NCBI GenBank assembly: GCA_965637545.1
Contig: OZ281501.1
Span: 11,842,001 to 11,906,000, forward strand
Direction: 5' to 3'
Source of the DNA: Phallusia mammillata
Lineage: Eukaryota
Length of the DNA: 64,000 bases
Part shown: one piece after another, positions 600 to 61,100 of the stretch
How positions within the stretch are numbered: position 1 is the first letter of the stretch
Layout of the letters: the number at the start of each line of letters is the position of its first letter
Program-made: the position numbers and the translations under genes
The notes under the pieces: generated by a model
What the model saw: only the letters and a program-made list of their open reading frames with translations
Told to the model about the DNA's origin: nothing
Databases searched by the model: none

Positions 600-3500
600 A
601 TGAAGTCCCCCAAAAGAATTTGCATTATCGGAGGTGGTGCAAGTGGACTTACTGCCATAAAATGTTGTTTGGATGAATGTTTAATTCCTGTTTGCTATGA
701 AAGATCTGGCGATATTGGGGGTAAGTCTTGGTGGCAATGAAAAGTATTTAAAATGTGTCTTTAGGAACTAATCATTTGCCTCTGTGCTTTTTTAAATGGT
801 TAGTTTACTTTATCACAATAGTCTTGATATCATATTACCCCTATGGTGGTTCATTACATTTACACAAACAAGAACTGAGTGTTAGCTTGGATAAATTTGT
901 TAAGTGTATAAAAGTGCTTCAAAATTGCATAGGTTTGTGGAGATACACAGAGGAAAAGACTGTTGGTGCTTGTGTCTACAAATCAACCATTATTAACACT
1001 AGTAAAGAAATGATGTGTTTCTCAGACTTTCCAATTCCTGAGCACTTTCCAAACTTTATGCACAACACAAAAATTGTGGAGTATTTTAGGATGTATGCAA
1101 ACAAGTTGAGTGATATATATATTTACTGTTTATTTTTGTGGTATCACATGTTTTTGTGGCTTATCTGTTTGCAATGCTATCATAAACTTTTGTTCATGCT
1201 CCTAATGGTGCATGCTACAGTATATCAATATCAACCTATATGTTAAACAGGTTTGGATTAGATAAGCACATTCAATTTAAAACTGAAGTTGTATCATGTG
1301 AGTTTGCGAGGGATTATCATGAAACTGGAAGATGGTAAGTGTTACCAACCAAAGATAGGATATACATCCAACCAGGATGTTAAATGACATTGCAAATCAA
1401 TTGTTTTGGGTTCGAGCTTTTTTTTAATCTACCACTAGTTTCAAAACCACGATGGACTGTTTATGCAAATCAGGAAAACTATTTTTTTTAAATTACCACT
1501 TTTGCACTTGATGCAAACCTTAAAAGTGTGGCTTTCAGCTTGTCATACACATGTATTCAAAGGGTAACGTTAGAAACAAAGCGTCCGCTACTTAACACTA
1601 TGTATTTGTTTTCTTAACACTATGCATTTGTTTAAGTGTTTGTTGGTGAAAACATAACAGACATTGTTCTGATAGAGAAGGCTGTAGGCACAAATACTGT
1701 TTCATATAATTTAGAAAACACAAAACATGTTTATCACTTGGGTGGGTTTGCAAATGCAGGGAAAAGTCATCTTCAGAAAGTGGCAGCCAGTGAGTTATGA
1801 AATATATAATAGTAATGGGACGAGTACCCGGTACTCACATGGGCTTCCGCAGGAAACAATACAGGGGAGGGCAATACTATCGTCACATCGCCGTTCGATA
1901 AACGGTATTTCAGAACAAAAACCATCTGACAGTGATACTCATTCTTGTCAATCCCAATGTAGCAAAGTAGTGCAATAAACAGAATATTAACTATCACTGA
2001 AGTATGTGGTAGGTTGGCAAATAACTTTTTAACGTAAGTAGAATTTACATACACATACCTTATTAGATGTAATAACAGACACAGTGAAGGTATCACATAA
2101 TGGCTTTTTTACACATCCATCAATGACGTAATAATATGCTTGTTACTGAGCTATTGATAAGTAATAATGTTCGATTCATTTAATCTGTTGTAAAACCTCA
2201 TCCTGTTGTGTTACAGTTACAGCTTGTATTGGGTGCATTTAACAGGGTGGGTCATTCCATGTCAACTGCCCAGGCCAGTTAACCCACCCCCTCAGATTTT
2301 TATAAAATTTAAAATGTGAATGCAGCTAGTTACACTGATTTCAACAACAAATTTTTTTTTGAAAACTATCAATGTTTCACGAAGTTATGACTTTTTGAAA
2401 ATATGTCAAAAATGTGATCACTGCAGCGACGCGCATCAATGATTTTTAAAATACTGTGTTTAAAATGTCAGATTTCTTTCTAATTTGTATATTGTGGTCA
2501 TTTTAGTAGGTTAGGTGAACCTTTAGGACATTCTCAATCACCTCATTATAGTTTTTCATGTTTTTGAAATACGGGTCAGTAATTTAAGGGGGTTCAGTTT
2601 GGGGGTATGCAAATGTGCATTCATGCGTAACGACAACTTTAAAAGCTCATATCTTGAAGAGCACACTAGCTACAAAGTTGAGTAATGGCTCAAATGAAAG
2701 CTCTTGCTGAGTACTTTCCTTGTTCTTAATTTGATAATGCTTCTCTGTAATTTGTTTGAAGCAGGGTCATAATAAAACACAGGTTCATTTTTCGGATATT
2801 TTTGTGATACTGCTTTTATTATCTATACTTTATGTGCCCTAATTTGTGATTAAAAAGTTGTTAAAATGCAAAAGTTTAGTGTAGGTGCCTCACTGGATAC
2901 TGAATGCCACAAAAAGGCATATCCAGCACAAAAACAAGGTATTTTACCAATTGACTCTCTAACAGATGAAGAACAAGTGCTTCTGAACATTCGAGTTGCT
3001 GCTGATAAGGGCAATGAATGTTGTTTGGAGAACATATGTATTTTCCACAAGTACAATTACATTGGTCGGTACCCTTCTATGCAGAAGAAGTGTTGTCCTT
3101 TTCAAGTCCACACCAAACCAGTCAAAAACTGTAGTATACATTCTATCACTTGAGAATGTTACCAGAAATATAAAAATTAAAATTTAAACATTGTCCCGGG
3201 AAAAAAGGTGTGTGTCAACTACAGTACAAGACTTAAAGAAACTCTCTCTCAAAATGTATCATCAAATGAAGAAGCTTCGAGTTTGACTGACAGTGATATA
3301 TATAACATTGCATTTACTGTTGAAGCAAACGAATCTTTCAGCAGGCTTAATGAAAGTTTACAGAGCGTTGAGGTGAATAACTGTGAAGTTGCATGGTGTG
3401 CCTTCAAGCAGTAACATTTTCTATGGGAAAAGAAAATTATTTCAAATTCATGATGCCTTCATGCAAAGATGTCCAATTTTTTTTAATGTCAGTGACGTAG

Positions 3501-6500
3501 CCCTATAGCAAGACCAACCTGACACTAAAGATGAAGACAAAATGAAAATAAAATCTTTTGACAACATTATCTCTAAAATGAAAAAAATTAAGAACAGTGG
3601 CAGTACGATAGCAGAAAAAATACAAGTCCCCATAATGACACCCAAGTAACTGGTCAAGAGAAAAGACTAGCTCAAACGGAAAATCACACCTTTTCACGGT
3701 ACAATGTTTAAATTTTAATTTTTATATTTTTGATAATATTCCCAAGTGATAGGACGTATATTACGATTTTTGACTGGTTTGGTGTGGACATGAAAAGGAC
3801 AACACTTCTTCTGCATAGAAGGGTACCGACCAATGTAATTGTACTTGTGGAAAATACATATGTTCTCCAAACAATATTCATTGCCCTTATCAGCAGCAAC
3901 TCGAATATTCAGAAGCACTTGTTCTTCATCTGTTAGAGAGTCAATTGGTAAAGTACCTTGTTTTTTTGCTGGATATGCCTTTTTGTGGCATTCAGTATCC
4001 AGTGAGACACCTACACTAAACTTTTGCATCTTAACAACTTTTAATCACAAATTAGGGCACATAAAGTATAGATAATAAAAGCAGTATCACAAAAATATCC
4101 GAAAAATGAACCTGTGTTTTATTATGACCCTGCTTCAAACAAATTACAGAGAAGCATTATCAAATTAAGAACAAGGAAAGTACTCAGCAAGAGCTTTCAT
4201 TTGAGCCATTACTCAACTTTGTAGCTAATGTGCTCTTTAAGATATGAGCTTTTAAAGTTGTCGTTACGCATGAATGCATATTCGCATACCCCCAAACTGA
4301 ACCCCCTTAAATTACTGACCCATATTTCAAAAACATGAAAAACTATAATGAGGTGATTGAGAATGACCTAAAGGTTCACCTAACGTACCAAAATGACCAC
4401 AATATACAAATTAGAAAGAAATACAACATTTTAAACATAGTACATCAAAAAGCATTGATGCGCGTCGCTGCAGTGATCACATATTTGACATATTTTAAAA
4501 ATGTCGTAACTTCGTGAAACATTGATAGATTTAAAAAATAAAATTTTTGTTGAAATCAGTGTAACTAGCTGCATGGACATGTGAAATTTGAAGAAAATCT
4601 GAGAGGGTGGGTTAACTTTTGCCATTTTTCTGGGACGTTTGACATGGAATGACCCAGGGTGGAGACCCACGACGTCTTCAGTTTACGTTCCAGGAAAAGT
4701 TTTTGTATAACACTGTGTGAATGTTTATTGTGTTTTAAGATGCGGATTTTGCGACCTTTTGCGTTTTTCTTTTTTCCAGGGGGGGCACACGCCCCCGCTG
4801 CAGACGCCCATGGGTACTCAGTATCGAACGATTTCAGTAGTATCGATACTCATACGCGGTATCTAAATATTTTATCTCAGTTTTCAATACCGCAGGCCGG
4901 TTTTCACCATAAGAATACGGGCTTTTTGCCAATATTTGCTTCGGACAGCACAAAAATGCGCTTTTATGTGGAGATTACATTTTTCTGCATGTGTTTGTGT
5001 GCACGTCTGTACCCCGGCCATGGCAGATAAATTAGATAGTGATATACAACTAAGTACAACACTAAACTTAATTACTCGGTAATCATACTCAGTACTTGGT
5101 ATCGAAGGTATATACATGTGGTCCCGGTATCGGTACTCGCTTCAAAACCTGGTATCGACCCATCACTTATTTATACTTCATTCTACTTCTAACTAAGTGT
5201 CCAAAAAGAGAGTTTTTTTTGTAGGATTGTTCGATCCAAAAACATTGAAACAAAAGAAGAAGTTGTAAACCTGTTTGACGGAATTATTGTTGCTGTAGGA
5301 CACCATGCAGTGCCATATTTACCACTGTCATCTTTTGCAGGTACAGTACATATTTATATACTTCTGTTAATCCAGCTTTGTTTTAGTCATATTTAAACAT
5401 TACATGTATTGGTCATTTATCTACTTTCAAGGTTTTGAGCTGTTTGGTGGGGGTCATATGCACAGTCATGATTACAGAAATTTCAATGGATTTGAAAACA
5501 AAAGGGTATTGGTTGTTGGAATTGGAAATTCTGGTGGAGATATATCTGTTGAGTTGAGTAGGGTTGCCAAACAGGTATGTGTTTTGGTTTCATTCAACAC
5601 AAATCTCAGATTTAATTGTATATTTTTTGCCAAAGGTGTTTTTAAGTACCCGAAGAGGTGCATGGGTCATGAATCGAGTAGATGATTATGGACTACCACT
5701 AGATATTGTACGAATAAACAGGTAACAATAGACCTGATTAATGCAAACTCTTGCTATTCCTAAAATATTCATTATACATTTTGTTACTTCGCCACTTATA
5801 AAGGGGACACATATTCCCCATTTTTTTGTTTCTTTCTTATATCTTTTTTTTAGGTTCCAAATGCATTTAATTTTTATTAAATAGGCGTTTCAGGTTGTGA
5901 CTTATACCTTTGGCTCATGAGACCACAACACAAATTTTAAATGGTATTCTGAAGGTTACCATGGTACCAAGTTTAAAATCATTTTTTTGCAATTTTTTCG
6001 TGGATACATACTCTTAGAGACAAAAAACTGAACTCTCATTCTATTCAGGTTTAATCAGTTCCTGCTTAACAAACTTCCATCAGCTGTGACTAACTTTTAT
6101 GGACAGACTGTGCTCAACAAAAAATTTGACCATGAAACATATGGCCTTCGACCAAAGCATGCAGTACTTTCTCAGGTATTCAATATCTTTTAGGTGACAT
6201 GTTTATTTAAAAGTAATACTTCCTGGACACAGAAATTGTTGTCAAAAAGAACAGTAACAGAGTTTGTTTGACACTATATGTATAGCATCCGATGATTAAC
6301 GATGATTTGCCAAATAGAGTGCTAAGTGGAACTCTAACTGTCAAGGGAAATGTTTCTAGTTTTGCCAAAAATGGAGTATATTTTGAAGACAATACATTTG
6401 AACAAATAGACTATGTAATTTTTGCAACAGGTTATAACTTTGCCTATCCATTTTTGGACAATCAAATTTTAAAGGTGAGTTTCTGTTTTATTTAACGATC

Positions 6501-10355: not shown

Positions 10356-11147
10356 CAGGGGTCGCCAACCTTTACCACCCAAAGAGCCACTCGGACCAGT
10401 TTCACGTAGTAAAAAAACACTGGGAGCCACAAAGTCGTTTTAAAATTTAAAATAAAATGCAAAACGTTTTTAGTCTTATGACATTCGACTTTTTGTTGTT
10501 GTTTAGCTAGTGTTTCATTGCATATTAGACACACCGGTATACTAGTCTCGTCAGCAGAGAAACAACTTTACGTAGCGTTGCATATTCTGTTTTTGCAGAT
10601 TTGTATTCTATTGTTAACGCGTTTCTAACGTAACAATTAACAAACAGCTATTGTTACGCGCGCACACACACTGCAAACAAAAACAGTATTGTCTCATATT
10701 GCGCCTGGCCCATTGAAGGCGCTATACCGAATCAGCCGGTCACCAAGCATTCACCACCGGCTGATTCGGTATAGCGCCTTCAATGGGCCTGGCGTACTGT
10801 GATTTATATATGAGTGTGCCGTGATCGCTGGTCTGCATAGACGCTTTAGGGTTGATCCCAGTTATGAATTTATGTTTGTCTCATATTGCGTATTAACCTG
10901 CGCTCCGCCAGTTTGCCTCTTTCAGACTTCACGTTTGATGGTATAGAGATGGGGTTGCAGGTAACTACAACAAGCTAGTACAGTCATGCTACTGCACTTC
11001 AATTTTCGTGTTCGACTTTTGTGTTCAGCATAATCGTCACATAATTTTTATTCAAATGTACAACATTTGGTAAATTCAAAAACTGAGCCGCATCAGAGGG
11101 ATCAAAGAGCCGCATGCGGCTCCGGAGCAGCGGGTTGGCGACCCCTG
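10356..11147. mobile_element. hAT-type MITE with a nested insertion
   Basis: TIRs CAGGGGTCGCCAACC / GGTTGGCGACCCCTG. Perfect 8-bp TSD TGTTAGGT at 10348-10355 and 11148-11155. Confidence 0.92.
10704..10875. mobile_element. Rearranged partial copy of the tRNA-containing element at 50835-51158
   Basis: Shares CCATTGAAGGCGCTATACCGAATCAGCCGGTCACCAAGCATTCACCACC and, in reverse complement, AACATAAATTCATAACTGGGATCA.CCCT.AAGCGTCTATGC with the 50.8-51.2 kb copy. Flanked by the 15-bp direct repeat TTGTCTCATATTGCG (10689-10703, 10876-10890). Confidence 0.8.
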
Positions 11148-12081: not shown

Positions 12082-15000
12082 ATGAGGTTATGGGAAAACA
12101 AAAGGTTTCTAAAAAAGTTGCTGGTACTGACTGGAGCTGCATTGATTGTCTGTATCATGTTTCAGGTACTGAAAACGGGGATTCGCAAATAGTGGGTCGC
12201 GACCCAAATTCCCGGCGGATGGCTGGGTCGCTAAATTAAATGTTTTCATGCAACGACACATTGTAGTCGTGTCCGGAACAAAGGTTTAATAAGGAGGTTT
12301 ATGCGCTAACAATCGGAAAGTTACGTTCCGGCTAGGACGCTGGTAGCAGTTTCTTGCTAAGTGGTGACTGCACTAAGTGCAACATATCAAACTGTTTTTG
12401 CATTTGAACAATGTAAAAGTGTTAAAAACGTGTAATGTTGTGTTGCTTAGATCCACCAAACACGTAATAGTTTGTCAAAAACATTAGATCGATGTAAATC
12501 GAGTTATGTTATTAGGGTAATTTGTTACTTGCCAGGCACAATTTATGCCTTCTGCAGTTACCACCTTAAGTACATTCGTGACTTTGCGCAACTTAACAGT
12601 AGGATTACCGCTTCAGCAAGAGATTTAGTTCTTTAGAAATTGGACCCTGTTTTTTTAAGCAACGATTTTGATTACCTGACAGTCACGCTTATTTTGCAGC
12701 TGCAGTTTGGCTGAGTAAGCTAGATAGCAGCGGCGAAATCTGAAAACTACAACGCCTTTGCTAAAATTACCTGTTCTTCCTGTCAATTAGATGGGTAGAG
12801 AAACCGCCAATTTTGGAAAAAAGTGCTTTGCCGCATAACGCGTCGTTTTGAACGACGTGTGACGTCATTAGGGATTTCCCCCAAAAAATTGTTGGACCCC
12901 CCTTTAAAAATTTCTGGATACGCCCCTGCACAAAGGGAATCTGTTTTTTTCATCACGTTACATAGTGATTTTGATGCGTGTTAACTATTGGATGCCAGCA
13001 AAGCATTAGATTTGTACTGAAAATTTAGCTTGTCATAATTCGAAGGTAAAAGAAATAAGAATAAATAACAAGGAACATATCGTTTTCAGGTAAAGAAAAT
13101 ACATGATGATAACAAAAAAGGAGACACGAAACAATTATTTACTGCACATGAACAACACAATGACGAGAAAGATGTGAAAACGTTTAGTACAAAAATGGAT
13201 ACAAAAGGTTCTTATATAAGTACCAATACAAAGTACATTCGCCACACTGAAGTCCAAGCCAAACATTCCTATTATGTTATGATTATGCTGTAACAAAGGG
13301 AGAGAACGCACTGTAGTCAGGATATGGTGTTCTTAAAGCACTTAAGGTTATGATCATTTTTTTAATAATTTATTGTCACATGTTTGATGCAGCTGACACT
13401 GTTTGTAGATACAAAGGAAGCAAAAGAAGAACACCGACAAGTTTCAAACAATGTTCGTTCTGGCCCGTGGCCGTCAAAGATGTTTTCAGGCCTTGGCGTG
13501 AAACATTTTTCCAAGTTGAATATTGTATGTAATTAGATAATTCAGCAAAACACTGATTGTAAAAGAATTTGTGTTCATGCTTTGCAGACGCAACCTCACA
13601 TCAAATCTTCAAGATATTTACTTCCTCTTTTGTTTTTTGACATGGGACCAAACAACCTTTACCGGCTGTTTAGACAGGGTGTAGTCACTGCTTATGAAAT
13701 GGGAAGAACAATCGTAGTACCGGTTTTCCACAGGTAATAAAGCACTGGATTTATAAGTTTACCAGTAACCACTAAATATTACCACTAACTACGAATCGTT
13801 ACAAAAGCTTAACATATAGTAAGGAAAACCGTTAGAGAGTTTATTCACATAAAACATATTGCGCGGCAAAACGAAATGGATTACTATATTCTGTCTCACC
13901 CTACCAAAAGAAAGGGCAAACAAAGAAAAATTAGGGCATTATATACTATAGCTTTACATCATTAATATTGTTTGCTGCACAATCTCCAGACATCCTCGAA
14001 TGGGCGATCGAGCAGAAAATCCATTTGATGTTCAGATTTACGACCAAAATTACACAGTTGACCTTGTGTGGTCACCCAACGAAACAATAGACACTGATGC
14101 TCTGATGGAGGTAATATAAATAAACCAAAAACCTTTTTACATGTGTTTCACTTATTTTGTAACTGTTGGAAAGCGCTTGAACTAATAATGTAAGACGCAA
14201 TGGCTGTTTTGTTTGTGGTTGAAAAAGCTGTGTTAATTTATTCATTTTATTGTCTCTGACCAGTATCTTTTAATCTGTCTAAGGTTTTGGGCGTAATATC
14301 GATGAAAGAGTTCCACAAGAACTGCAACGGTCGTTTGGACGCGTTGGTTCAATGCGGATACCTAAAGGAGAGACGGGTCAGAGAATTTGCCAATTTTCAA
14401 CGAGCGGCTAATTTAATGGTACGTTTCAACTTTCTCAATTGCTTGATCGTTAAGTGCAAAAACCTACAAACACCAAAAACAGTGTACCTAGGCAGTGGTG
14501 GGATTCAATTTTTTTGTCAGCCGGTTCTATCGCAAAAGTCATATTTTTCAGCCGGTTCTGTTACAAAAAGTCCATTGACAGTAACCAGTAATGCTTACCG
14601 GTTCGCTGATCTCATAAAATTTCGTGAGACGGTTCTATAGAACCGGTGCGAACGGGCTGAATCCCACCACTGTACCTAGGTAATACGGCATTCACATGCT
14701 AATGAGGACATGATATTTAGGTTTGCTAGTCACGGAGTAGTTACTGACATAGTTCTCAGATATTTTCCTTACAAATCTGTAATGACCGTAACAGTTTTAA
14801 AATGAAACTTTATGACAAGGAAATTGAAGAGTTACACATAATTGCGCACTGGTGGGCTCACTTCATTGTCACTGTATCACGACAATAAAATGTATGGTAA
14901 TGTGTTTAATGGTCATATCAGCTCTCTATATTTATTGCTTATAGCAGTAGTTCTCAAACTGTGCGTCGCGACGCCCTGGTGAGTCGTTTCAAATTTTCAA

Positions 15001-25247: not shown

Positions 25248-25306
25248 CAGCCGGTCACCAAGCAATCACCACCATATGGCAAGGCGTAGACTAGAAAAAA
25301 ATCTAG
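25248..25306. repeat. Short fragment of the tRNA-containing element (3' trailer part)
   Basis: CAGCCGGTCACCAAGCAATCACCACCATATGGCAAGGCGTAGACTAGAAAAAATCTAGC matches ~50876-50933 with two substitutions and one extra A. Confidence 0.85.
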
Positions 25307-26115
25307 CAAAAGTCAATGTAGTATAAACGTTTTTTAATACAAACACAATGAACGAGCAAACAGCGCGTTTGTGAACTCATCGGTTTTTGGAAAAAAATCG
25401 GGTTCCTTTGCGTTGTGGACATGCAGCGTATAGTCAAGGCGTCCCTTGGTCTGTCTTCAACGCTTTCAATGGCCAATAGTGCCTCGGCAATTGTCATAAG
25501 ACGGGTCGCGTTGCCAAATATTTGTGATCAACCTTCTCGCCCAAGCGGGATCTTTCTCCAGAGCTTTGCCCGTTGCAGTTGCAGTGACAGTCCAACTTCC
25601 GTGTCTGAACTTTCACACGCTCCTGTAGGCTTATGACCAATCACCCTGTTTCCCTCTGCGCTATGGAACCGGTCATAATCAGCGCCCGAACAACTATTTT
25701 TATCGCCCGCTGTTGTAATCGGTTTCCTATGACATAGGGTGCTTTGAAAATTCGCACCAGTTCATTTTGCGGTATGCGGTATTTCCAATTTTGTCGCATT
25801 TGACATTGACAAATTACATACAATTGGCCGTACCAGTTGTTCAATAACAACCGGGTTTTTCATTTCATAACCAACTTTTTTGTTGTTAAACATAGTAAAT
25901 GAACCAATTAGTTTGGGCCATTAGGCCAGACCTTAACTGTTTTGCAAAAAAACAAACGTAACGGATGTAAGTGTAACAAATTTTCGTTTTTTTCTTGTGC
26001 AAAAAAGCTTGATTGTAAATGATATAGCATAGACACAGTATCCAAACCAAGACTTGTTGCATGGCGGGCATTTTATTACAAACACATAATATAGGGGGAT
26101 ATGTACATTTTAAAT

Positions 26116-39037: not shown

Positions 39038-42000
39038 TCATAAAATTTTGTTTAATTTTCTATTTTGCCCAGAAGGCAAAAAATTCACAGACTTTACGTA
39101 AATACGAATCAAGTTTTATTGTACCTGAATGTTTGGATGGTGACGTTCAACTAATACAGAGCCACTTGGGGGCGCCGACACATTTGGGCTTCTGGAACGG
39201 GGTCCAGGGTCGCCACCCGCCACACCGGTGACTTTAGCGGATAAGGTAGAAGTACGGCCAGCCTGGATTCGAACTGGTCCGTGACTTTGAGGTTTGGAAA
39301 ACTGCTGGTTGGTCCGCACAGGATTAGATTGAGTTTTAGCTGGTACCTGCAAAAATATGGTTGAAGACTCAAAAATGCCTCAAATAACAATGCCTCACTT
39401 TTCATACCCACAAAGCGCCTTCTAAACATTTCGGTTGTTTATTTGGTATTAAAGCAAAAAAGGCTACACGTGTGTTCATACATGGACTATACAGGCTTAC
39501 AAAACCACAACCTTGGTGCTTTTGAAAAACAACATTTTGCAAATTTAAGCAGGAAAATGTCATGGCGGAAAACATCGATCACTGCAATTTGGATCGAGAA
39601 ATGCCTAAACCTAAATAATACCTTGTTCGCAATAATTAACATGATTTCCCACCTGGTCATTATGCAACAAGTGTTCGATCGTTGACGTATGTGCCACCCT
39701 AAAACCAAACTAAAATCGACCAAAGGGGAGAAAAGGGGGGAGTGTTGATGTTTCACTCTCCCGCAATTATTAAGACATTTTTAGGTTTTTGAATTGGGAA
39801 ACAGCAAACCGTTCGCTCTAGTATTATCAAATCAGTAACGATACTGTATGTTTGTACAATTCTCCTACATGTGATTTAAAAATCTAATTCGTATTTATGT
39901 TCACAAACACGAGAATCCATAACCAAAAATAATTCCTAAAATAAGACAAATATTCTAAATAAACATAGAGAAGTGTTTTCGTTTTCCACATAGCTTGAAG
40001 TGTAGCCCTTCCTTGCCTTTAGTATTGATTTTTGTGACAAGGTTTTTGCCAAAAATCAAACAAACGAAAACCAAAGTGTCAGATAAAAAAGGTTAAGCAT
40101 CATAACGTAGCGTAATATTCGTTAAATACCCAGAACCAATCAATTGAAATACGATCGAACTCCGTGGATATAAAGAGTCACCGACAGCCGCACCCACATG
40201 CTAATTACCTTGCTAACTGTAGGGCGGGGCATCATAGGATCGGCATTCCTCAACAGCGAATCACCGGTGCGGCGTGTTTGATTGACAGCTGGTTTGGTGC
40301 GCTGCGGTTGTTCGGCATCGGATGAGGCGCAGGTGAGAGCATCAACAGCGGCTGCTAGTGTCCGGACTTCCTCAGTGGCTGCGAGAGGTAAGGTTTGAAT
40401 GTAATCATAGAATTTTTCGCAGCTCCAACGCTCAGAATTTTGCACAACTTGTTGACTCAACAAATAGGCATTTTTTTGTCAAACTAATCCAGTTAACACA
40501 TCATTTAGGCACAAATATATCGTTTTTATATGAGCACGTGTTAAAGCCTTAAAAAATATAATTAAAATTTTACACATGAAATTTAGACATTTACTTTATT
40601 ATTATCTCTAAAACATAATTTTTGTTAAAATATATGAAGCTTACTTGTCGTATTTTCCTCCTCGGCGTTAAACATCGTCATTGCTTCAAGGTTGAGTGCA
40701 CACACGCCACGCATGAATGCCTTTTTCATAGTTTCTTCATATCGATCTCGTTCATCGTGCAAACGCTGGACTTCGTCACGAGAGCTCTCCAGTGCTTCGT
40801 TGATCTTTAAAGAATACATTTTAAATCTTTAAACTATTTCAGAAAAAAACACGAATAAATACAAAACTCAAATTATACGAGGTTTCTTACCGATGCCAGT
40901 TTAGCCTCGTAATCGTCAGTGAGCTTCATACACACTTCCTGTGCTTTTTTCTGACAAGCTTTTTCCACCTTTTCCCGCCATTTTACTTCCACTAAACTTC
41001 TCCAACCCTGCCACGCCTTCGCCGCTAGAGCATGCTCGCGATGACGTCGCGCCAAAGTGGAAGTAAAACCCTTAAATACAAAGTTGTGTTTAATTTAATC
41101 AGGCCCCAAAAAATTGAAAAAAAATCACGGTGAAGTATTATGAAAATGTTTAAAACAAATTTGAAATCACACATAAATTTATGTCAAACCTCAAAATTAC
41201 CTGTCGTTTTTCATCAACTAGTCTTATTTTCCAGTGAGTAAGAGCCCTTGCCATCTCCTGCCTTTCCTTACTACTGTGCAGTGCTCTGGTCAGGTTGGAT
41301 ATCACAGAATCTTTGCGGTTCAGTGAAGTATCGTAAGTGTGTAAAAGTTCCTTCAGATTGGCAATCTCATCCTTAAATCACAAAAAATAACTTAGTTGTG
41401 TACATACATTTTACCTAATAACATTAAGTTTTACTTTAGCAACAATGTGTTACAGCCCTTAACGAAGCTATATGCTAAGTGTTACAAAATTTAAAACTGA
41501 ACATGAAAATATTTTTGATCTTTTTTTTACAACTCAAATATATATATATATATATATATATATGATAACAAAATATAATAACACCTGTAACTTATTTCTC
41601 TCAGATTCATGTTCTTGTTGCATTCCATGAAGTTGACGACGATAATTTTCTGTAATTGTAATCTTAATCTGGCTCAGTTCAGCCTACAACAAGAACATTT
41701 TTTTCAACGAGAGCAAAATGAGATGAAAAGTCTACAAACTTAAAATAGGCTACAAAATATTAGCTACACTATTATATATAACCTGCCTATTTGTAACTAA
41801 TAGTGATTTTCAATTGCTTTTTTTACAATTTTACTATTCAGCACATTGTTAGAAATTGAATTAAGACATCGTCTGTGACGTCACTTCACACATCTGGCTT
41901 TTCCTTTTTTTTCCTTAGTGCTTTATATACCGTGTTCTACAGCTTGATTAAAAACATGTACTGATGATGACAACAGAGATTGTCGAAACGTCTACACGAT

Positions 42001-43913
42001 GTATTCTATATACACCACTACCTTGGCAGTAATGTTTATGATTGAATTAAGACATGCTGTACAACTAAAATTTATGAGGAAAAGGTAATACCAAAACAGA
42101 GCTGTTCATCTTTGTATGCCAGCTGGAAAGATGAGTGTACATGCGCTTAATATCAGCATCCCCATTATCACTTGCATCTAACGTTGACTCATATTGTTTT
42201 CTTGATGCACTGGGTTCTTCTCTCAAGGAGGAAGTTGCAAGGTTCGGAATTCCTTGCAGAATGTCTGCCAATAAACAGCATTACTTCTCTACATCCCCAA
42301 CCTTTGATCAAATATAATGTAGTTAATAGGCAATTGTCAACTGTTTTCAAACCTTTTGGTGAAGGCTGTGAACTGCTTCTGAAGGTTCTTCTATCAGTGG
42401 CAATCTCTTCACTTCCCATTGCACTATCATGGCCTTCACGCTTTTCAGATTCGGTTCTGGATGAGTTATCTAATATAAATTTGAGCAGTTAATATTTTGT
42501 ATTGGAGCGTTTTTGTCCAATGTTGGTCTGAATTTCCTAGTGGGTTGCAAAATAAAGGAAGTAACTCTAATCTCTTGTTTATTGGCTGATGACCATGGGT
42601 GTGCATGACAATGCTAAATCTTTACATTGGTTTTGTTTGTTGTCAAGAGCAACATCAACCAAAACATTAATGATGCAAAACAACTTTTTTGCGTTTCAAC
42701 CTGAAAAATAATAGATAGCACAAACAACTATTTTAGGGTGCTGAATATCGCTAGGTCAAAAAAGTCAGGCAACCACTGGTTTAAGTATGGAGTCACAGGT
42801 TATAAACATGTAACTATAAAACCCTACAGTTATATCAAAAATAAAAGCTATCCATTTTACTTACTCTGTTCATACTGACAGGTTAAGAACAAAAACATTA
42901 TGCAGTTGTATTATTAAAAGATGCTGAGTTGAGTTTATTTCGCTCTGTGAAAAATTGTAGTAACACAATTGCACTAAAATATTCTGCTTGCCGGAGATAG
43001 CAATAGCATGTTAATTCATAGCCAGAAAATAGCAACCTGAATATTCATCAACAGTTGTGAGAGCAAGATCATCTGGTTCTTGAAGTCGAAGTTGAGGAAG
43101 TGTAACATTCTGTTGCACTGTTACACTTGGCTCCCACTTTGGTGTGACAAGAGCATATTTTAGTAGTTCATCATACTCCTCCTGCAGAAAGATGCAAATT
43201 TGTTTGTAAGTTTGCCGCCAAAATGACACCTGTTAATAGGAGTAAAGGACTTTTTCCAAGTAGGACAAGGACATGACAGCAGAAGTGTTGGACTTGTAGG
43301 TACACTGTTTGATGACTACTGAGTTTATAATACATCAATGCTTTTAAAAGTATGCAAAGAGAAATACACAAATTCATTTATTACACACAAATACACAAAC
43401 CCTCAGGTCAGCAAACATTTTTAACACCATTTGGTTTCTTTTCCTGTGTCCTAAAGATACTTCTCTAGTCTGTTTGGGTGTGAACGAATTCAGACTACGT
43501 GCAACATGCAGCATACTTTTTTAGTTTAAGCTTCTGACGTTTATTTGTTTATGCTGTTTTGTGGCTAAAATCTATTACACATCACTTTAGCCCTTTCTTT
43601 TACCATTGACGCTGCCCACACATGTGAAATATATATCTCCTCAAGAACCACGACCAATTTTCAGCCAGAAGCTCTGCTTCTTTTAAACTGGTGTATAAAT
43701 CATAAAAACGTTGTTGGTAAAAATGAACTATGCAAGTAAAGCAAAACTTTTTGAGAACGACGCATTACAAAGTTCATTTTTAACACAATAAATATTTAAA
43801 ACAACGAATTACGAAGAAACGCTAACCTGCAAACCAGATGATACGGAACTTCCTTTTGAAGTGTCGTAATTTATCAGCGGTCCGTCCCCGTCATCTTCGC
43901 TTATGCTGGACAT
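39038..43913 (-). CDS. POC5: Centriolar protein POC5
   Basis: Exons 43913-43827, 43181-43037, 42469-42353, 42264-42092, 41683-41585, 41371-41201, 41070-40891, 40804-40645, 40378-40209, 39346-39125 are in phase. The last exon is uncertain (candidate 39091-39038). Diagnostic blocks: [70 protein letters not shown]. Confidence 0.93.
41538..41563. repeat. (AT)n microsatellite in a POC5 intron
   Basis: About 13 uninterrupted AT units. Confidence 0.95.
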
Positions 43914-45251: not shown

Positions 45252-45424
45252 CAGTGGTGGGATTCAGCCGGTTCGCACCGGTTCTCTAGAACTGTCTCAC
45301 GAAATTTTAAGATCAGCGAACCGGTTAGCATTACTGGTTAATGTCAATTGATTTTGTAACAAAACCGGCTGAAAAGTATAACTTTTGTGTTAGAACCGGC
45401 TGAAAAAATTTAATCCCACCACTG
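45252..45424. mobile_element. hAT-type MITE (family of 14493-14672)
   Basis: TIRs CAGTGGTGGGATT / AATCCCACCACTG. TSD GTTGTTAT / GTTGTGAT. The interior is the reverse complement of the 14.5-kb copy. Confidence 0.9.
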
Positions 45425-49114: not shown

Positions 49115-52100
49115 TCATCTGTCCGCGTTGTTTGGGCCGTTGACAGCCGTCGGTCTGTTCTGGTGATTTCCTCCGTAAAAATCGCGATGACCGCCTCGCC
49201 TGTTGGCACGGTAACCACCGCGCCCACGAAATTCACGGGGTCCTCCCCTGCCACGCCCACCACCGTTGTATCCGTAATCCCGATAGGAGTTATATCCCTG
49301 ATCGCGATTGTAGTAGCCTCGATGGCCACGGTAACCATCGTAACCGCCGCGACGAACGTAGCCGTTTTGCTGGTTGCCATCGTAACGCCGTTGCTCCCCA
49401 CTTTCATCATTGTCTTGTGCGCCACCGCGCGACTGTCTTTGATTTCTCGAGGGCGCCTTAGTCGACTCCGGGGTTTCGTTGTGCGCCTTGACGTCACTAG
49501 GTTCGCGTACGTCATCAACCGAGCGCGTGTCATCACCGGAATCAGATTTAGAGGAATCTGAAGAGTCTTTGCCGTTCAAAGCAGCTGCTACGGCGGCCAT
49601 TCTGGCACTTTGCTTTTTGCGTAGCATGTCAGCATAGGTTGGTTTCCTTCCATTTGAATCTGAAACGTAATGCGTGTTTAATAAAGCTGACATGTGTTTA
49701 ACACTTTCTATGACGGTAAAAAACATGACATGGTATTACTTCTATTACCTGGAGTAGGCGATGACGAAGAAGAGTTCCGGTCACTGGAGGAATTCACGTC
49801 GTCGCTTCTTTGTTCCTTAGGAAGTGTAATCTAGTATTGCACAAATGCATTAGAGCTTGTAGAGTTGATCAGTAACCCAATTCAGTTACAAATTATGTGC
49901 GTATTCGATTATGTACTACTTTACGAATATCGTTATCGAAAACAGAAGTAATAGGTCACAAGTTCTAAACCGGGATAATTTCGACATGTCTTGAGGTTAA
50001 TATTGGTAAACTCAAGTTCTGACTTTCATTGAGGGATGAAAAATATTTAGTCTATATTGTTTTCACCGTGACAGACACATACACAAGCAATAAACTGTTA
50101 ATAATTTTCCCGATTTCGTTTCTGCAAAAGTTTTGGTAGGTTGTTTTGCAAAAAATATCTTCGGCCAAGATGTAAACACAAAAAGCACCCTGATTTTGCA
50201 CAGGTAGTTTTTTTGCAAACTATCCAATACATGTGAAAACTTTTCTTTTTAAAACTTAAGCCAAATGTAACAACCAACAACAGAGTTATCTCACTTCGTT
50301 AGGTTGTGACACAGGAACAGGGCGGTCGACTTGAGCTTTGCTTAAAATCTCCGCTTTGTTTCCACCTTCGTGTCTGGTGTTGGTCTCTGCTGGTTTCGGG
50401 TGCTGTGATTTCTTCATCGACGAACTGCGAGAGGCGGACCTCCCCTTGTGAGGTGGTGGTTGGTCATGGTTTACGGGAACCTTCTCCGCGGGAGCAGTTG
50501 ACTCGTAAGCCTTTGGTTTTTCCGGGGTTGGCTTCTCAACGGGTTTTGTTGGCGTTACAGGGGGTCGTGCCTTTGTTGCGGTTGGTGCAGGTGCTAATGA
50601 AGTGATACAATATTGTTTGTGTTATATTTGTTTGTATACATGGTATACCATAAAAACTCAAGGGACGTATTAACAGATAGTCAAATCCCCAGGAATGAGT
50701 ACACAGCGAAAAATAAACACAGGCAGATACATTTCAAGAGTATCAGCATTTTAAAGAAAAACCTTACACAAAATGTCCGCCCCTTGTTTTAACAATTTCT
50801 TACACTAATAACTTTATGCACTTCTTCCACAATAAATCACAGTACGCCAGGCCCATTGAAGGCGCTATACCGAATCAGCCGGTCACCAAGCATTCACCAC
50901 CATATGGCAAGGCGTAGGCTAGAAAAATCTAGCCTGCGGTGGGATTCGAACCCACGACAGGAGTCTTTCCGGGACTCGCGCTCTACCAACTGAGCTACAC
51001 AGGCCCAGTGGAGAATCCGCCGAAAGTCGAATCACAAGCACCGTTGCCTGCCTGGTATGCTGCACATGTCAGCTTCGCAGTAGGGGATCGCCAGATTGAC
51101 CAGTATCAGTTAAGATGAACATAAATTCATAACTGGGATCAGCCCTGAAGCGTCTATGCTTCCACAATAGTTAGTATCACGTACCTTTTTCTGTGGGTGG
51201 TGGGGCAATTTCGGGTGCAGAGTTCAAAGGTGGGGTCGCCTGTTGTTCGTCTGGTTTCGGTTTGGGCACTTTGGGCATTATTGGGGTTTCTGGGGCTGGC
51301 TGGGGGATCACCATGGGTTTGGGGGCTGGTTGCAGAGGCATATGGTAAGTGGGAGTGATAGAAGAGTTTGAAACTTCAGAATATTTCTTGCTTGTTTGAA
51401 CGACAGCAGCTACCACTGGTGCCTGCGTTAAACGGATGTTGGTAAAACGCAGTTCATACAGTTCTTCTTCCAGCAGTGCGTAAAAAATGCTTGGTTTTAA
51501 AAATTCAGATGTACGCTATGGCTTTAACTGAGCTGTAAACCAACGACATTTTAAATGAGCTATTAATCAACGAGAGTTTTGTCAAAAAGGGTAGTTTTCG
51601 AATAATAAACAAGCAACTGTTTTTTAGCAACTTTAAAGCTAAAACTCGTAGTATCATTCCTCTTATTGTTTAACCAGTAACAAACACAGTCCAAAGCAAA
51701 GGTTTCTTAACCATAATCGGCCCAATCCCGCGATTCAGCAATATCAAGTAAATAGGGATTTGTTTACAGTAGTAACACGTGTCAACGTTTTGCGAATCGT
51801 ACCTTGGCAGTTTCAAGACCTTTGACAACGTCAGCTGCGGCAGGTCTTCCCTCAACCGGTGCACCATTGGTCACAGAAGCCTGGAATAGAAAATTGCGAA
51901 CATCCATCAAGTAGTAAAATTTCCAAATTCAAATAAAAGTTGTTCTGTGTGTTTTCTTACCGTTGTCGAAATAGATCCAGGCAGAGGCGGAAATGAGTTG
52001 CTTTCCAGGGTGAAAGGTGTGTTTACGGAGGGCATGGGAGGAGGGGTTACCCGCTGCAAACAAAACATATTTGTATTTAAAAGCGTTTATTTAATACACG

Positions 52101-58100: not shown

Positions 58101-61100
58101 GATTTTATACCGGTTTTTCAACTCACTGCAAAAATAGTTGGCTGAAGAAACATTTTGCAGATTTTTTACCATAAATGTTAAGCTAATAAAAGAGAGTTTT
58201 GTTGGTACATTTGCACATACTTTTTCCTAACACAAAAATAAATCACACACAACTAAAATACAAAATCTTACGAGTATTTCTGGGTTTGGTGGGTAAAACT
58301 GCCCCTGGTATGGGACCATGATACTGAAGTTGCTGATCAAGGAGCCTGGTTGTCCCTGCCCACTTGTTGAAGGGGATGGGGCAACTCGAGCAATGAAAGG
58401 GGGTGTGTGGGTGAGTGCAGGTGACATATGATTCTGTGGATGAGCTGTGGACCCAGGAATCGGCCCAGGTGGACAGAAAATAAATTGCTGAGGAACATTG
58501 GAAATTTCACCAGGCTGTGAGCTTATCTGTCAACAATGAAAGCAAAAACATTGTTAAGTATATGAGGAAAATAATACAAAATACACCACTACATACAACT
58601 TAACAACATTTACCATAAAACGGAACAGTGCCAATATGATAAAAGTTATGTTTATTTGTGTAATGATCTTTCACTTTCTGACAAAAAGCCCACTTTTCAT
58701 ACAACACTGATAAAAACATTTTGAATTTTATTGTAAGCAGGGTAATAATACCTTTACAACAAATAAAGACTTGGCCAATTAGTTTACATGGTAAATTGGA
58801 ACTTACTTGTTGCTGTGGTGTGGGTGGTTGCTGGGGGTTTCCTTGTTGCTGTATGGGTTGGGAAGGTTGGGTGGGAGTTGGGGGCTGTGGTTCAGACTTT
58901 GGGGGTTGATTGGGACGGTTAGGAACTGTATAGTTAAACATAGTCTGGATTGTCTTTGACTTGATGCGAGCCTAAATGAAAAAAGATGTAAAGTTTACTG
59001 TTTTGCAAATAAATAAATGAGATCACGTTAAAACTGTGTTTGAATCCCTGCATTTGCTATGGAATCAAAATCTTTCATATTTAATATTTGTTTCATATCA
59101 TCTGTAAACTAACTTCAATATTAGCACCATGTTTGTGTTGCTCACCTAGCACTGCGCATGACTATATTTTATTTTTTAATCTTGGGTAGGCACAATTGTG
59201 GACATTATTTCCATGTGCTTGACTGAGAATTTATTCTCAGACCTACCATAATTGGCTTTCCAAGGAAAGATTGAACATTTTCTCGCAGATGTCTGTATGC
59301 AGCCTGAGCATCTGTTTCATTGGCAAATGCAACATACCAACTAGTACCAGCAGCAAACTCACACGACAGAAACTTTGGGCAAGTTGGCCCATTGAACAGA
59401 CCTTCAACACTCTGGAGAAATATATTTTGTTTTTAAATGAAATTCTTCCTTTTTATTGCACTGAAAATTAATATGCATACTCCACTTTATGTGTTAACTT
59501 AAGAAGAACTGGAAAATTCTTACCTCAACAGGTGTGTCTCCAGGTATTTCTCTTAATATGACAATACATCGTGTTTGGTTGGGTCGAACTTTTTCTTCCT
59601 TATCATCTACTTGAACCAAGCTTGATGCTGTGAATATAGTTATTTAGTCTTGATTTTGGCATCACATTAATAGTGTGTTTCTATTGTTCAAATAGGGACA
59701 AAAGTATCATTTTATTATTCTTATCATTGTATGCAAGGGAATATACAATGGACATTCATACTTCATGTGACAACATCTCTTCTTCGTAAAACCTTACAAA
59801 TTTGGGACAAGATTCGGGACAAGGGATTATATTTTGACCACCAATTTTGCAAGTGAAAATGAAAATAGGGTACCTTTTAATGCCTCTATGACCAGGCTAA
59901 GATCAGAGGTTAACTTTTTTACTGCATTGAAGTTGGCAATAGTCCAGATTGGCACATAGGTTTGGTTGTCCATTTGTGATATCAGGTAGGGATCTTGAGC
60001 AAGGTTTTCCCTGTGGGCAAACAAAAATTCCATAAAACAGTCAGATTCTATTTGTCAGACTATCCAATCCTTCATATCTGGTACAATATTGCAATGAAAA
60101 AACTGAGAGTAAATACATAATACATAAAAACCTTAATACATATGACTAAACTTTTTGAAACAGAGGACCAATGAGCAATGTTGTGATCAGTATATGTTTA
60201 CATTTCAGGATATTAGTTACACAATTTGAGCAAATTACTATTGCAGATTATGACATACATTTTTGATACGATTTAACAAAACATCTTGCACTGTTATATT
60301 ACACTAGTTAGCAAAAAATATATATAAGTGTTTACTGGTTAAAATTAGTCTATGTGTTTTATTGGCAAACATGAACTGTTGAAGTGAACCCTGCCATGAC
60401 ATGACGAAGGAAATAACCCATGTTCAATTGTTAAAATATTCATAACTTTTTTATTGTCAAATATTAACTGAATTCAGCTATGACTTGACAAATTAGTTGT
60501 CTCACATAGTAAATAAAAAAACTTATCCCAATTACAAACCCCTATAGCAAACAGGAAACAATACTAAAATGCACAGGAATTGGTCCATTCCTGATTAAAC
60601 ACACACACAGCAGACACAGTGTTTGCTGAGGTCTGCACACCAACTTAAACCCATACATTGTAGGTCAAGCAGCAACAAATTAGTCCAAGTCTTTTGTCAA
60701 TGAGATTCAAATGGCCAATTTTAATGCAAAGGTACATTCATAGAAGCATTTATTTGAATTATAAACAGGCTACAAAAATGGTTCCCAACCTTAATTCCTC
60801 CGCAGTGAGACATTTAAAACTCAAGGAAAGAATTTTTATTTTTTATTTGTTTGGTGGTTTATAAACTCAAACTATTATTGTCATTTTTTGGACAACTTGG
60901 TTCCATATTTTTATCATGTAAACTATTAAATTAATGCAGCAGTACATATTTCAGTTGTGGCAACCTACCGTGAGAAATAATATTCTAGCTGGCGTTGTAA
61001 CTGTTCCTTGAGTTCTTTTCCCTCAAGTTTTGGAAGAGATGGAGAAAGTGGTTCCAAGCTACTTTCCATCTTAACCTCCTCACCAGCATCCAGTACTTGG

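What the first reader, a model, noticed from the sequence alone, without database searches (positions are those of the whole stretch)
50835..51158. Composite mobile unit carrying an internal, structurally intact but non-decoding tRNA
Seen: an 11-bp TSD, no poly(A), no TIR and no TG..CA LTR ends. A 154-nt leader precedes the cloverleaf, whereas ordinary SINEs begin at the tRNA. All four stems pair and both Pol III boxes are intact, but the anticodon arm is abnormal (CCGGAAA loop, C33, extra base, nominal Ser-GGA without a long variable arm). A T5 terminator directly follows, so Pol III could not transcribe the leader and would stop before most of the trailer. The whole unit therefore needs another transcript or template to move. 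Two further copies in this window are truncated, inverted or permuted. Inference: an undescribed non-autonomous family, possibly Penelope-like or tandem/circle-derived, analogous to Cassandra TRIMs that carry 5S promoters internally. It lies sense within a LARP4 intron.
Basis: partly seen in the sequence, partly recalled or inferred. Interest (0 to 1): 0.78.

Follow-up and report, generated by a model that had tools for sequence, protein, structure and literature searches.

The report
Penelope-style retroposon carrying a tRNA-like gene
This is one truncated copy of a young, abundant 355-base non-coding jumping element that carries a tRNA-like gene, and its insertion scars match those of Penelope-like retrotransposons rather than an ordinary SINE or a new class of element.

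Summary
The copy is 324 bp on the minus strand with an exact 11-bp target duplication, no poly(A) and no inverted ends. It has an internal tRNA-like cloverleaf (Rfam 55 bits) with an abnormal anticodon loop, followed by a T5 run.

The 324 bp is not the unit. The family unit is 355 nt, the 324 bp plus a conserved 31-nt joiner seen in head-to-tail copies. The family is young: the best copies are 98-100% identical, and a 19-mer from the 3' end has 561 exact hits.

I sampled 64 loci by position.
- Copies are 5'-truncated.
- 3' ends fall at two fixed sites 80 nt apart, A and B.
- Two-armed head-to-head insertions pair A with B 28 times, A with A once, B with B never.
- Target duplications are 8-16 bp, median 13.

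These are the published hallmarks of Penelope-like element (PLE) insertion. No hammerhead ribozyme was found. No helper was identified: three PLE families of this genome share no sequence with the unit.

The window copy is a solo A-type arm in a 591-nt intron of a LARP4-like gene, in sense, and is spliced out.

Earlier notes of this scan reached the same reading on other DNA of this genome.

Verdict: new variant of a known kind.

The parts
50835..51158 (-). One insertion of the family: a solo arm covering unit positions about 1 to 324, with its 3' end at site A. It is 5'-truncated by about 31 nt relative to the 355-nt unit.
   Evidence: 100% self-match; other copies 98-99% identical; the 31-nt joiner is absent here; end classes.
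50824..50834 (.). Target-site duplication, left copy (CTTCCACAATA).
   Evidence: exact 11-nt direct repeat; the family range is 8-16 bp.
51159..51169 (.). Target-site duplication, right copy.
50930..51005 (-). tRNA-like module: a full cloverleaf with consensus A and B boxes, an anticodon loop CCGGAAA with C33, extra bases, and no long variable arm despite the nominal Ser anticodon.
   Evidence: the MFE fold is a cloverleaf; the 46-nt core has 213 exact copies in the genome.
50913..50938 (-). Hairpin formed by the 3' strand of the acceptor stem and the trailer, with the T5 run (50923-50927) in its loop.
   Evidence: 11-nt arms, 91% complementary; T5 is invariant in 71 copies.
51006..51158 (-). 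It holds site B (unit 41-55) internally.
50835..50929 (-). Unit positions 229-324, the 'trailer'. It ends at site A, one of the two family 3' ends.
   Evidence: 53 of 116 young arms end at unit 321-330.
10704..10878 (.). Second insertion of the family: an inverted A-type arm (unit about 258-322) joined head-to-head to a B-type arm (unit 276-355 plus 1-41). It is flanked by TCTCATATTGCG at 10692-10703 and 10879-10890.
25248..25307 (-). Internal fragment of the family (unit 226-283) at 93% identity, with a T7 run and neither family 3' end.
50594..51184 (-). Host intron (GT..AG on the minus strand) that contains the insertion, which begins 26 nt after the 5' splice site. Without the insertion and one duplication copy the intron would be 256 nt.
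   Evidence: a 3056-nt contig of run X9 joins 50593 to 51185; (splice-site letters).

Best explanation
The window holds one dead-on-arrival copy of a young non-autonomous retroposon. Its RNA is copied into DNA by the reverse transcriptase and endonuclease of a Penelope-like element (PLE).

Source copies are partial head-to-tail tandems of a 355-nt unit. Their transcripts therefore run through more than one unit.

The enzyme makes staggered nicks about 13 bp apart in AT-rich DNA. It uses both freed 3' ends as primers. Copying starts inside the RNA at one of two fixed sites: A at unit 321-330, or B 80 nt further on, at unit 41-55 of the next unit. A few bases of microhomology are involved at the start.

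- One priming gives a solo 5'-truncated arm, as in this window copy (site A, 324 nt, 11-bp duplication).
- Two primings give head-to-head arms, one ending at A and the other at B.

The tRNA-like module is not a decoder. Most likely it is kept in source copies as a Pol III promoter, as an RNase P/Z processing signal, or both. That step is inferred.

Shown here: the family anatomy, the end classes, the A/B pairing, the duplications, the family's youth, and the intron context. Inferred: which enzyme acts, and which polymerase makes the template.
For: Family anatomy:
- The 355-nt unit has a conserved 31-nt joiner.
- The top 40 scored candidates of 4660 are mostly 98-100% identical to the window copy.
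- A 19-mer from the 3' end has 561 exact hits.

Census of 64 loci taken by position:
- 99 of 116 young arms end at A or B.
- Two-armed insertions pair A+B 28 times, A+A once and B+B never (binomial P = 6e-8).
- All inverted pairs are head-to-head.
- Target duplications are 8-16 bp, median 13.
- Mean microhomology at 3' junctions is 3 nt.
- Target sites are 71% AT, against 62% for the window.
- 5' ends are scattered.

Published PLE hallmarks match:
- 5' truncation, partial tandems, an inverted 5'-truncated copy and a tail at one end only (PMC8557442).
- Two internal reverse-transcription start sites, and cleavage and extension of both strands (PMC11167929).

PLE families of this genome make duplications of the same size: 14 bp in L091 and 14 bp at window 41856-42055.
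Against: - No helper was found. The 973-aa and 845-aa PLE families, and the last 730 nt or so of the young family I call PLE-X, show no similarity to the unit.
- The distance between the two ends is 80 nt, not the published 30-40 nt.
- There is no hammerhead ribozyme, although some PLE clades also lack one.
- In vitro, the two strands did not differ in start site (PMC11167929). Here they almost always do.
- My sample required an exact 19-mer, so it favours young copies that contain unit 306-324.
Confidence: 0.8

Rival explanations
1. A tRNA-derived SINE mobilised by a stringent LINE (RTE, CR1 or L2 type), with the inversions made by twin priming.
For: It has a tRNA-like module with intact A and B boxes, variable target duplications, 5' truncation and no poly(A).
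Against: - The tRNA-like module is internal. Only 5 of 116 arms start near it, and only 19 of 72 contain it whole.
- There are two fixed 3' ends 80 nt apart, paired A with B in 28 of 29 two-armed insertions.
- The two arms overlap in unit coordinates, which single-template twin priming does not give.
- I did not test for a LINE tail match.
Confidence: 0.08
2. A retrozyme-like element whose template is a small circular RNA. Multimers would arise by rolling-circle reverse transcription, with RNase P/Z and a tRNA ligase replacing the hammerhead in making the circle.
For: - The 355-nt unit size is in the range of animal retrozymes (PMC7229834).
- Head-to-tail junctions occur in DNA and in contigs of runs that may be RNA.
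- 5' ends show a local excess just after the tRNA-like module: 6 against 1.3 expected, P = 0.003 uncorrected.
Against: - There is no ribozyme.
- The fold is no more stable than shuffles, z about -1, so it is not rod-like.
- Arrays have at most about 3 units.
- Tandem DNA copies explain every junction seen.
- Contigs cannot tell a circle from a tandem.
Confidence: 0.08
3. A DNA-level repeat: a DNA transposon, a Helitron, a tyrosine-recombinase element, or local duplication of a tRNA gene.
For: Some copies lie in segmental duplications (C3 at 3.9-5.1 Mb).
Against: - There are no inverted ends.
- Internal break points are variable.
- Target duplications of 8-16 bp flank dispersed copies on all large contigs.
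- Helitrons and tyrosine-recombinase elements make no such duplications (established knowledge).
Confidence: 0.02

Closest known systems
Non-autonomous Penelope-like elements (short non-autonomous Penelope elements of butterflies, PMC6685494; non-autonomous Chlamys elements such as MRC1, PMC8557442)
   Same: They are non-coding and form partial head-to-tail tandems. They show 5' truncation, inverted 5' copies and an extension at one end only, and they depend on a PLE enzyme.
   Different: This family carries a complete tRNA-like module. The extension is 80 nt rather than 30-40 nt. No sequence shared with an autonomous PLE was found.
Animal non-LTR retrozymes (PMC7229834; bioRxiv 10.64898/2026.07.22.740005)
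   Same: Both are small tandem units of a few hundred nt, non-coding and linked to PLEs, with target duplications longer than 4 bp.
   Different: Retrozymes are defined by a type I hammerhead in each unit and by circular RNA. Here there is no hammerhead and no evidence of circles. Arrays are short, and most copies are dispersed fragments.
SINE2/tRNA elements
   Same: Both have a tRNA-derived module with A and B boxes, are non-autonomous and have variable target duplications.
   Different: The module is in the middle of the unit, not at the 5' end. A T5 run follows it directly. There is no LINE-type or A-rich tail, and there are two 3' ends.
Cassandra TRIMs
   Same: Both carry a Pol III-type gene inside a non-autonomous retroelement.
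   Different: Cassandra has LTRs, a primer-binding site and 5-bp duplications (established knowledge). None of these is present here.

Membership tests
PLE-mobilised non-autonomous retroposon | Frequent 5' truncation with a fixed 3' region | tested here: met
   5' starts are spread over the unit, and 85% of 3' ends fall at two sites.
PLE-mobilised non-autonomous retroposon | Partial head-to-tail tandems (pseudo-LTR structure) | tested here: met
   arms longer than one unit have seamless 355-nt periodicity, up to about 3 units.
PLE-mobilised non-autonomous retroposon | An inverted 5'-truncated copy joined head-to-head | tested here: met
   29 two-armed insertions in 64 loci, none tail-to-tail.
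PLE-mobilised non-autonomous retroposon | [quoted passage not shown] | tested here: met
   A+B 28, A+A 1, B+B 0. The tail is 80 nt, against 30-40 nt in the literature.
PLE-mobilised non-autonomous retroposon | Sequence shared with an autonomous PLE of the same genome around its start sites | tested here: inconclusive
   no similarity to two full PLE families or to the 3' 730 nt of PLE-X. Other families and PLE-X's 5' region could not be fetched.
Animal non-LTR retrozyme | A type I hammerhead ribozyme in each unit | tested here: not met
   Rfam at E up to 10 on a dimer finds only the tRNA.
Animal non-LTR retrozyme | Circular RNA of unit length | not testable with these tools
   Only contigs were available, and they cannot tell a circle from a tandem.
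SINE2/tRNA | A tRNA-derived promoter head at the 5' end of the element | tested here: not met
   the module is at unit 155-228, and 5 of 116 arms start at 145-154.
SINE2/tRNA | A 3' tail that is A-rich, a simple repeat, or LINE-derived | tested here: not met
   ends A and B carry no simple tail. A LINE match was not tested.
Functional tRNA gene | A canonical 7-nt anticodon loop with U33, and a class II variable arm for Ser | tested here: not met
   the loop is CCGGAAA, there are extra bases, and the variable region is short.

The most novel reading that the evidence does not exclude
The tRNA-like module has taken over the job that the hammerhead does in other Penelope-type elements. Host RNase P and RNase Z would cut multi-unit transcripts at the cloverleaf into template RNAs, which would explain the excess of 5' ends at unit 226-231. 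A dimeric PLE enzyme would then start one cDNA at site A on one target strand and the other at site B on the other strand. If so, this family is a natural short substrate that exposes the strand asymmetry of PLE integration.
Probability: 0.2. Interest if true: 0.7.

Novelty: new variant of a known kind. Interest (0 to 1): 0.5.

Why it matters
How Penelope-like elements integrate is still poorly understood. This family offers hundreds of young, short, non-coding insertions whose ends can be read base by base.

They show in vivo that the two target strands almost always use different start sites: 28 of 29 two-armed insertions. The one published in vitro system saw no difference between the strands.

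It is also the first case I could find, in the papers I could search, of a Penelope-type non-autonomous element built around a tRNA-like gene instead of a hammerhead. That raises a testable idea: host tRNA-processing enzymes may replace the ribozyme.

For annotation, the practical point is that these copies are neither tRNA genes nor ordinary SINEs.

Tried and rejected
- **Hammerhead or other ribozyme.** Rfam at E up to 10 on a dimer and on the PLE-X/unit junction found none.
- **Viroid-like rod.** Folds of the unit and its parts are no more stable than shuffles.
- **Covariation in the cloverleaf.** Copies are too alike to say anything.
- **Helper by sequence.** The 973-aa and 845-aa PLE families and PLE-X's 3' part show no similarity. 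PLE-X's 5' region fell on a run of N, which I left alone.
- **A misreading I corrected.** I first thought all PLE-X copies end exactly where a unit array begins in L011. That was an artefact of where my query ended. PLE-X runs 36-41 nt further.
- **Empty allele of the window insertion.** None was among the joints shown. The likely source sample bridges both junctions.
- **Pfam on ten nearby minus-strand ORFs.** No hits. The La exon was found by a genome search instead.
- **Start of arms at the tRNA-like 5' end as a sign of a Pol III start.** Not significant.
- **Literature.** I found no paper on a tRNA-like module in a Penelope-type element. A search for the Ciona SINE name 'Cics-1' gave only unrelated papers.

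Full report
**What is at the coordinates**

The stretch 50835-51158 is flanked by an exact 11-nt direct repeat, CTTCCACAATA, at 50824-50834 and 51159-51169. It has no terminal inverted repeat and no A-rich tail.

The element reads in sense on the minus strand.
- ARAGORN finds a 76-nt tRNA there at 50930-51005, nominally Ser(GGA), with the anticodon one position late.
- Rfam's tRNA model scores 55.3 bits over its full length. The anticodon loop is CCGGAAA, with C where U33 should be, and there are three inserted bases.
- The A and B boxes read as consensus.
- 153 nt precede the cloverleaf.
- A T5 run follows it and lies in the loop of an 11-bp hairpin. The hairpin forms between the 3' strand of the acceptor stem and the trailer.

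**The real unit**

A search of the window's own assembly (240 Mb) gave 4660 first-look candidates. The 40 that were scored include dozens of full-length matches at 98-100% identity.

In those loci, successive copies are joined by a conserved 31-nt segment that the window copy lacks. The period is 355 nt.

For coordinates I used one natural copy, L021:1501-1855. I built no consensus. On that scale:
- the tRNA-like module is unit 155-228;
- the T5 starts at unit 232;
- the window copy covers about unit 1-324.

A 19-mer near the 3' end has 561 exact hits in the genome, against 0 for its reversed control. The 46-nt core of the tRNA-like module has 213.

**Census**

To avoid the bias of best-hit lists, I took the first 64 loci in positional order from the 19-mer list (contig 1 and part of contig 2). 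I mapped every piece onto the unit.

*3' ends.* Of 116 arms at 93% identity or better (counted over all 90 family loci fetched and the window):
- 53 end at unit 321-330 (site A);
- 46 end at unit 41-55 of the following unit (site B, 80 nt further on);
- the remaining 17 are scattered.

*5' ends.* They are spread over the whole unit and become denser towards the 3' end, as expected for truncated cDNAs. Only 19 of 72 arms hold the whole tRNA-like module.

*Insertion shapes*, after removing duplicates:
- solo arms ending at A: 14;
- solo arms ending at B: 14;
- two-armed insertions with the 5' ends facing each other: 29.

In the two-armed class, one arm ends at A and the other at B in 28 cases, both at A in one, and both at B in none (binomial P = 6e-8). 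No tail-to-tail pair was seen among the 100 listed places.

*Target sites.*
- 37 insertions have clear target duplications of 8-16 bp, median 13.
- About 3 nt at each 3' junction can be read as either target or element.
- Target sites are 71% AT, against 62% for the window.

*The window's copies fit.*
- 50835-51158 is a solo A arm with an 11-bp duplication.
- About 10704-10878 is an A arm joined head-to-head to a B arm, with a 12-bp duplication.
- 25248-25307 is an internal fragment.

**Comparison with what is known**

Craig et al. (PMC8557442) list the marks of Penelope-like element insertions:
- heavy 5' truncation;
- partial tandems forming pseudo-LTRs;
- an inverted 5'-truncated copy next to the 5' end;
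- a 30-40-bp 'tail' often present at one end only.

Frangieh et al. (PMC11167929) showed with purified protein that a PLE cuts and extends both DNA strands. Reverse transcription starts at two adjacent sites inside the RNA, and the tail is the stretch between those sites. They also found a preference for AT-rich targets.

Every one of these marks is present here. Two details differ:
- the tail is 80 nt;
- the two strands use different start sites almost without exception, which the in vitro work did not see.

Two PLE families of this genome make duplications of the same size. One is 14 bp around a 973-aa element in L091. The other is 14 bp (TTGAATTAAGACAT) around a 172-bp fragment in this window at 41870-42041.

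An ordinary LINE-driven SINE would have one 3' end, a head at the tRNA, and non-overlapping arms after twin priming. None of that holds here. DNA transposons, Helitrons, tyrosine-recombinase elements and Cassandra-type TRIMs are excluded by the ends and the duplications.

**What the tRNA-like module may do**

It cannot be a normal decoder. Pol III stopping at the T5 would give an RNA that lacks both start sites. The template must therefore be a read-through transcript or a Pol II transcript of a tandem copy.

- The T5 is unchanged in all 71 copies that keep the hairpin.
- Arm starts show no significant pile-up at the 5' side of the module.
- There is a modest pile-up just after its 3' side, at unit 226-231: 6 against 1.3 expected, P = 0.003 before correction.

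That pile-up could mean the reverse transcriptase stalls at the cloverleaf. It could also mean RNase Z-cut RNAs serve as templates. I rate the second idea as possible, not shown.

No hammerhead was found in a dimer, and the RNA is not unusually structured. It is therefore not a retrozyme by definition, and nothing here shows a circle.

**Expression and host context**

Only assembled contigs of public runs were available.

A 3056-nt contig of run X9 joins 50593 to 51185. This shows that X9 is RNA. It also shows that 50594-51184 is an intron, GT..AG on the minus strand. The insertion begins 26 nt after the donor site and makes up 335 of the intron's 591 nt. It is removed with the intron.

A La-domain exon lies upstream on the same strand at window 59875-60033. 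Its best solved relatives are LARP4 proteins, E = 1e-14, against 3e-6 for LARP1.

Element sequence, including the head-to-tail junction, occurs in contigs of X9 and of other runs guessed to be RNA. This can come from introns and tandem copies and proves no dedicated transcript.

The likely source sample (X15) bridges both junctions. No empty allele was among the joints shown.

A run labelled as another organism (X18) holds a cyclic 385-nt contig equal to the 355-nt unit at about 99% identity.

**The helper**

This is the weak point. The Pfam GIY-YIG model finds many PLE copies, some with open frames of 700-970 aa.

The 973-aa family (L091) and the 845-aa family (L092) share nothing with the unit.

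A third family, which I call PLE-X, is as young as the unit family: the top matches are 97-100% identical, with 833 candidates. It has a minimal hammerhead-like motif near its 3' end, shows inverted pairs, and left the fragment in this window.

In one locus, copied about 15 times by segmental duplication on contig 3, a unit array starting near unit position 8 is fused to PLE-X sequence. The fusion point is 36-41 nt before PLE-X's usual end, and no flanking duplication was found. This looks like a template switch between the two RNAs. It is a lead to PLE-X as helper, but it is one event.

The last 730 nt or so of PLE-X show no similarity to the unit. Its 5' part fell on a run of N, which I left alone.

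**Verdict**

Earlier notes of this scan on other DNA of this genome reached the same reading. They call the animal a sea squirt, which I did not test. I re-derived the anatomy independently and added four things:
- the positional census;
- the A/B pairing statistic;
- the intron proof;
- the PLE-X lead.

In the papers I could search, I found none describing a tRNA-like module in a Penelope-type element. Repbase and Dfam could not be searched.

I class it as a new variant of a known kind, of moderate interest.

Noticed in passing
window 41856-42055: A 172-bp 5'-truncated 3' fragment of a young Penelope-like family (my 'PLE-X') lies at 41870-41041+1000, that is 41870-42041, flanked by a 14-bp duplication TTGAATTAAGACAT. 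It carries a minimal hammerhead-like motif (CTGATGA ... GAAACGTC). Other copies are 97-100% identical over the last 147 nt.
   Followed up: partly
L011:560-1903 (and about 15 segmental duplicates on contig 3, 3.0-5.1 Mb): A decayed PLE-X 3' part (GIY-YIG region with stop codons) is fused directly to a 2.1-unit array of the tRNA-like element. The fusion point is 36-41 nt before PLE-X's usual end, with 2-4 nt of shared letters at the joint and no flanking duplication found. It may be a template-switch chimera and is a lead to the helper.
   Followed up: partly
L091:2145-5568: A Penelope-like element with a 973-aa open frame, 159-bp pseudo-LTRs at 99% identity, a CTGATGA...GAAA motif in the pseudo-LTR and a 14-bp target duplication. 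At least three places in the genome have the same open-frame length.
   Followed up: partly
window 50913-50938 (minus strand): The trailer repeats most of the 5' acceptor strand. The 3' acceptor strand can therefore pair either in the cloverleaf or in an 11-bp hairpin whose loop is the T5 run. In the fold of the whole unit, the hairpin wins over the acceptor stem.
   Followed up: partly
run X18 laid on window 50832-51159: A run labelled as a different organism holds a cyclic 385-nt contig equal to the 355-nt unit at about 99% identity, plus many 90-95% pieces. The family is either shared with a close relative or that sample contains this animal's DNA.
   Followed up: no
window 2277-4617: A large inverted repeat: arms of 579 and 352 nt at 94-95% complementarity around a spacer of about 490 nt. 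It may be another two-armed retroelement insertion.
   Followed up: no
G000 contig 2 at 1719879/1720221, 1726214/1726556, 1872352/1872694: Pairs of tRNA-like cores spaced 342 nt apart instead of 355: a shorter unit variant that lies in duplicated segments.
   Followed up: no
window 14512-14672 and 45252-45408: Two copies of another dispersed repeat in opposite orientation at 88-93% identity, about 30 kb apart.
   Followed up: no
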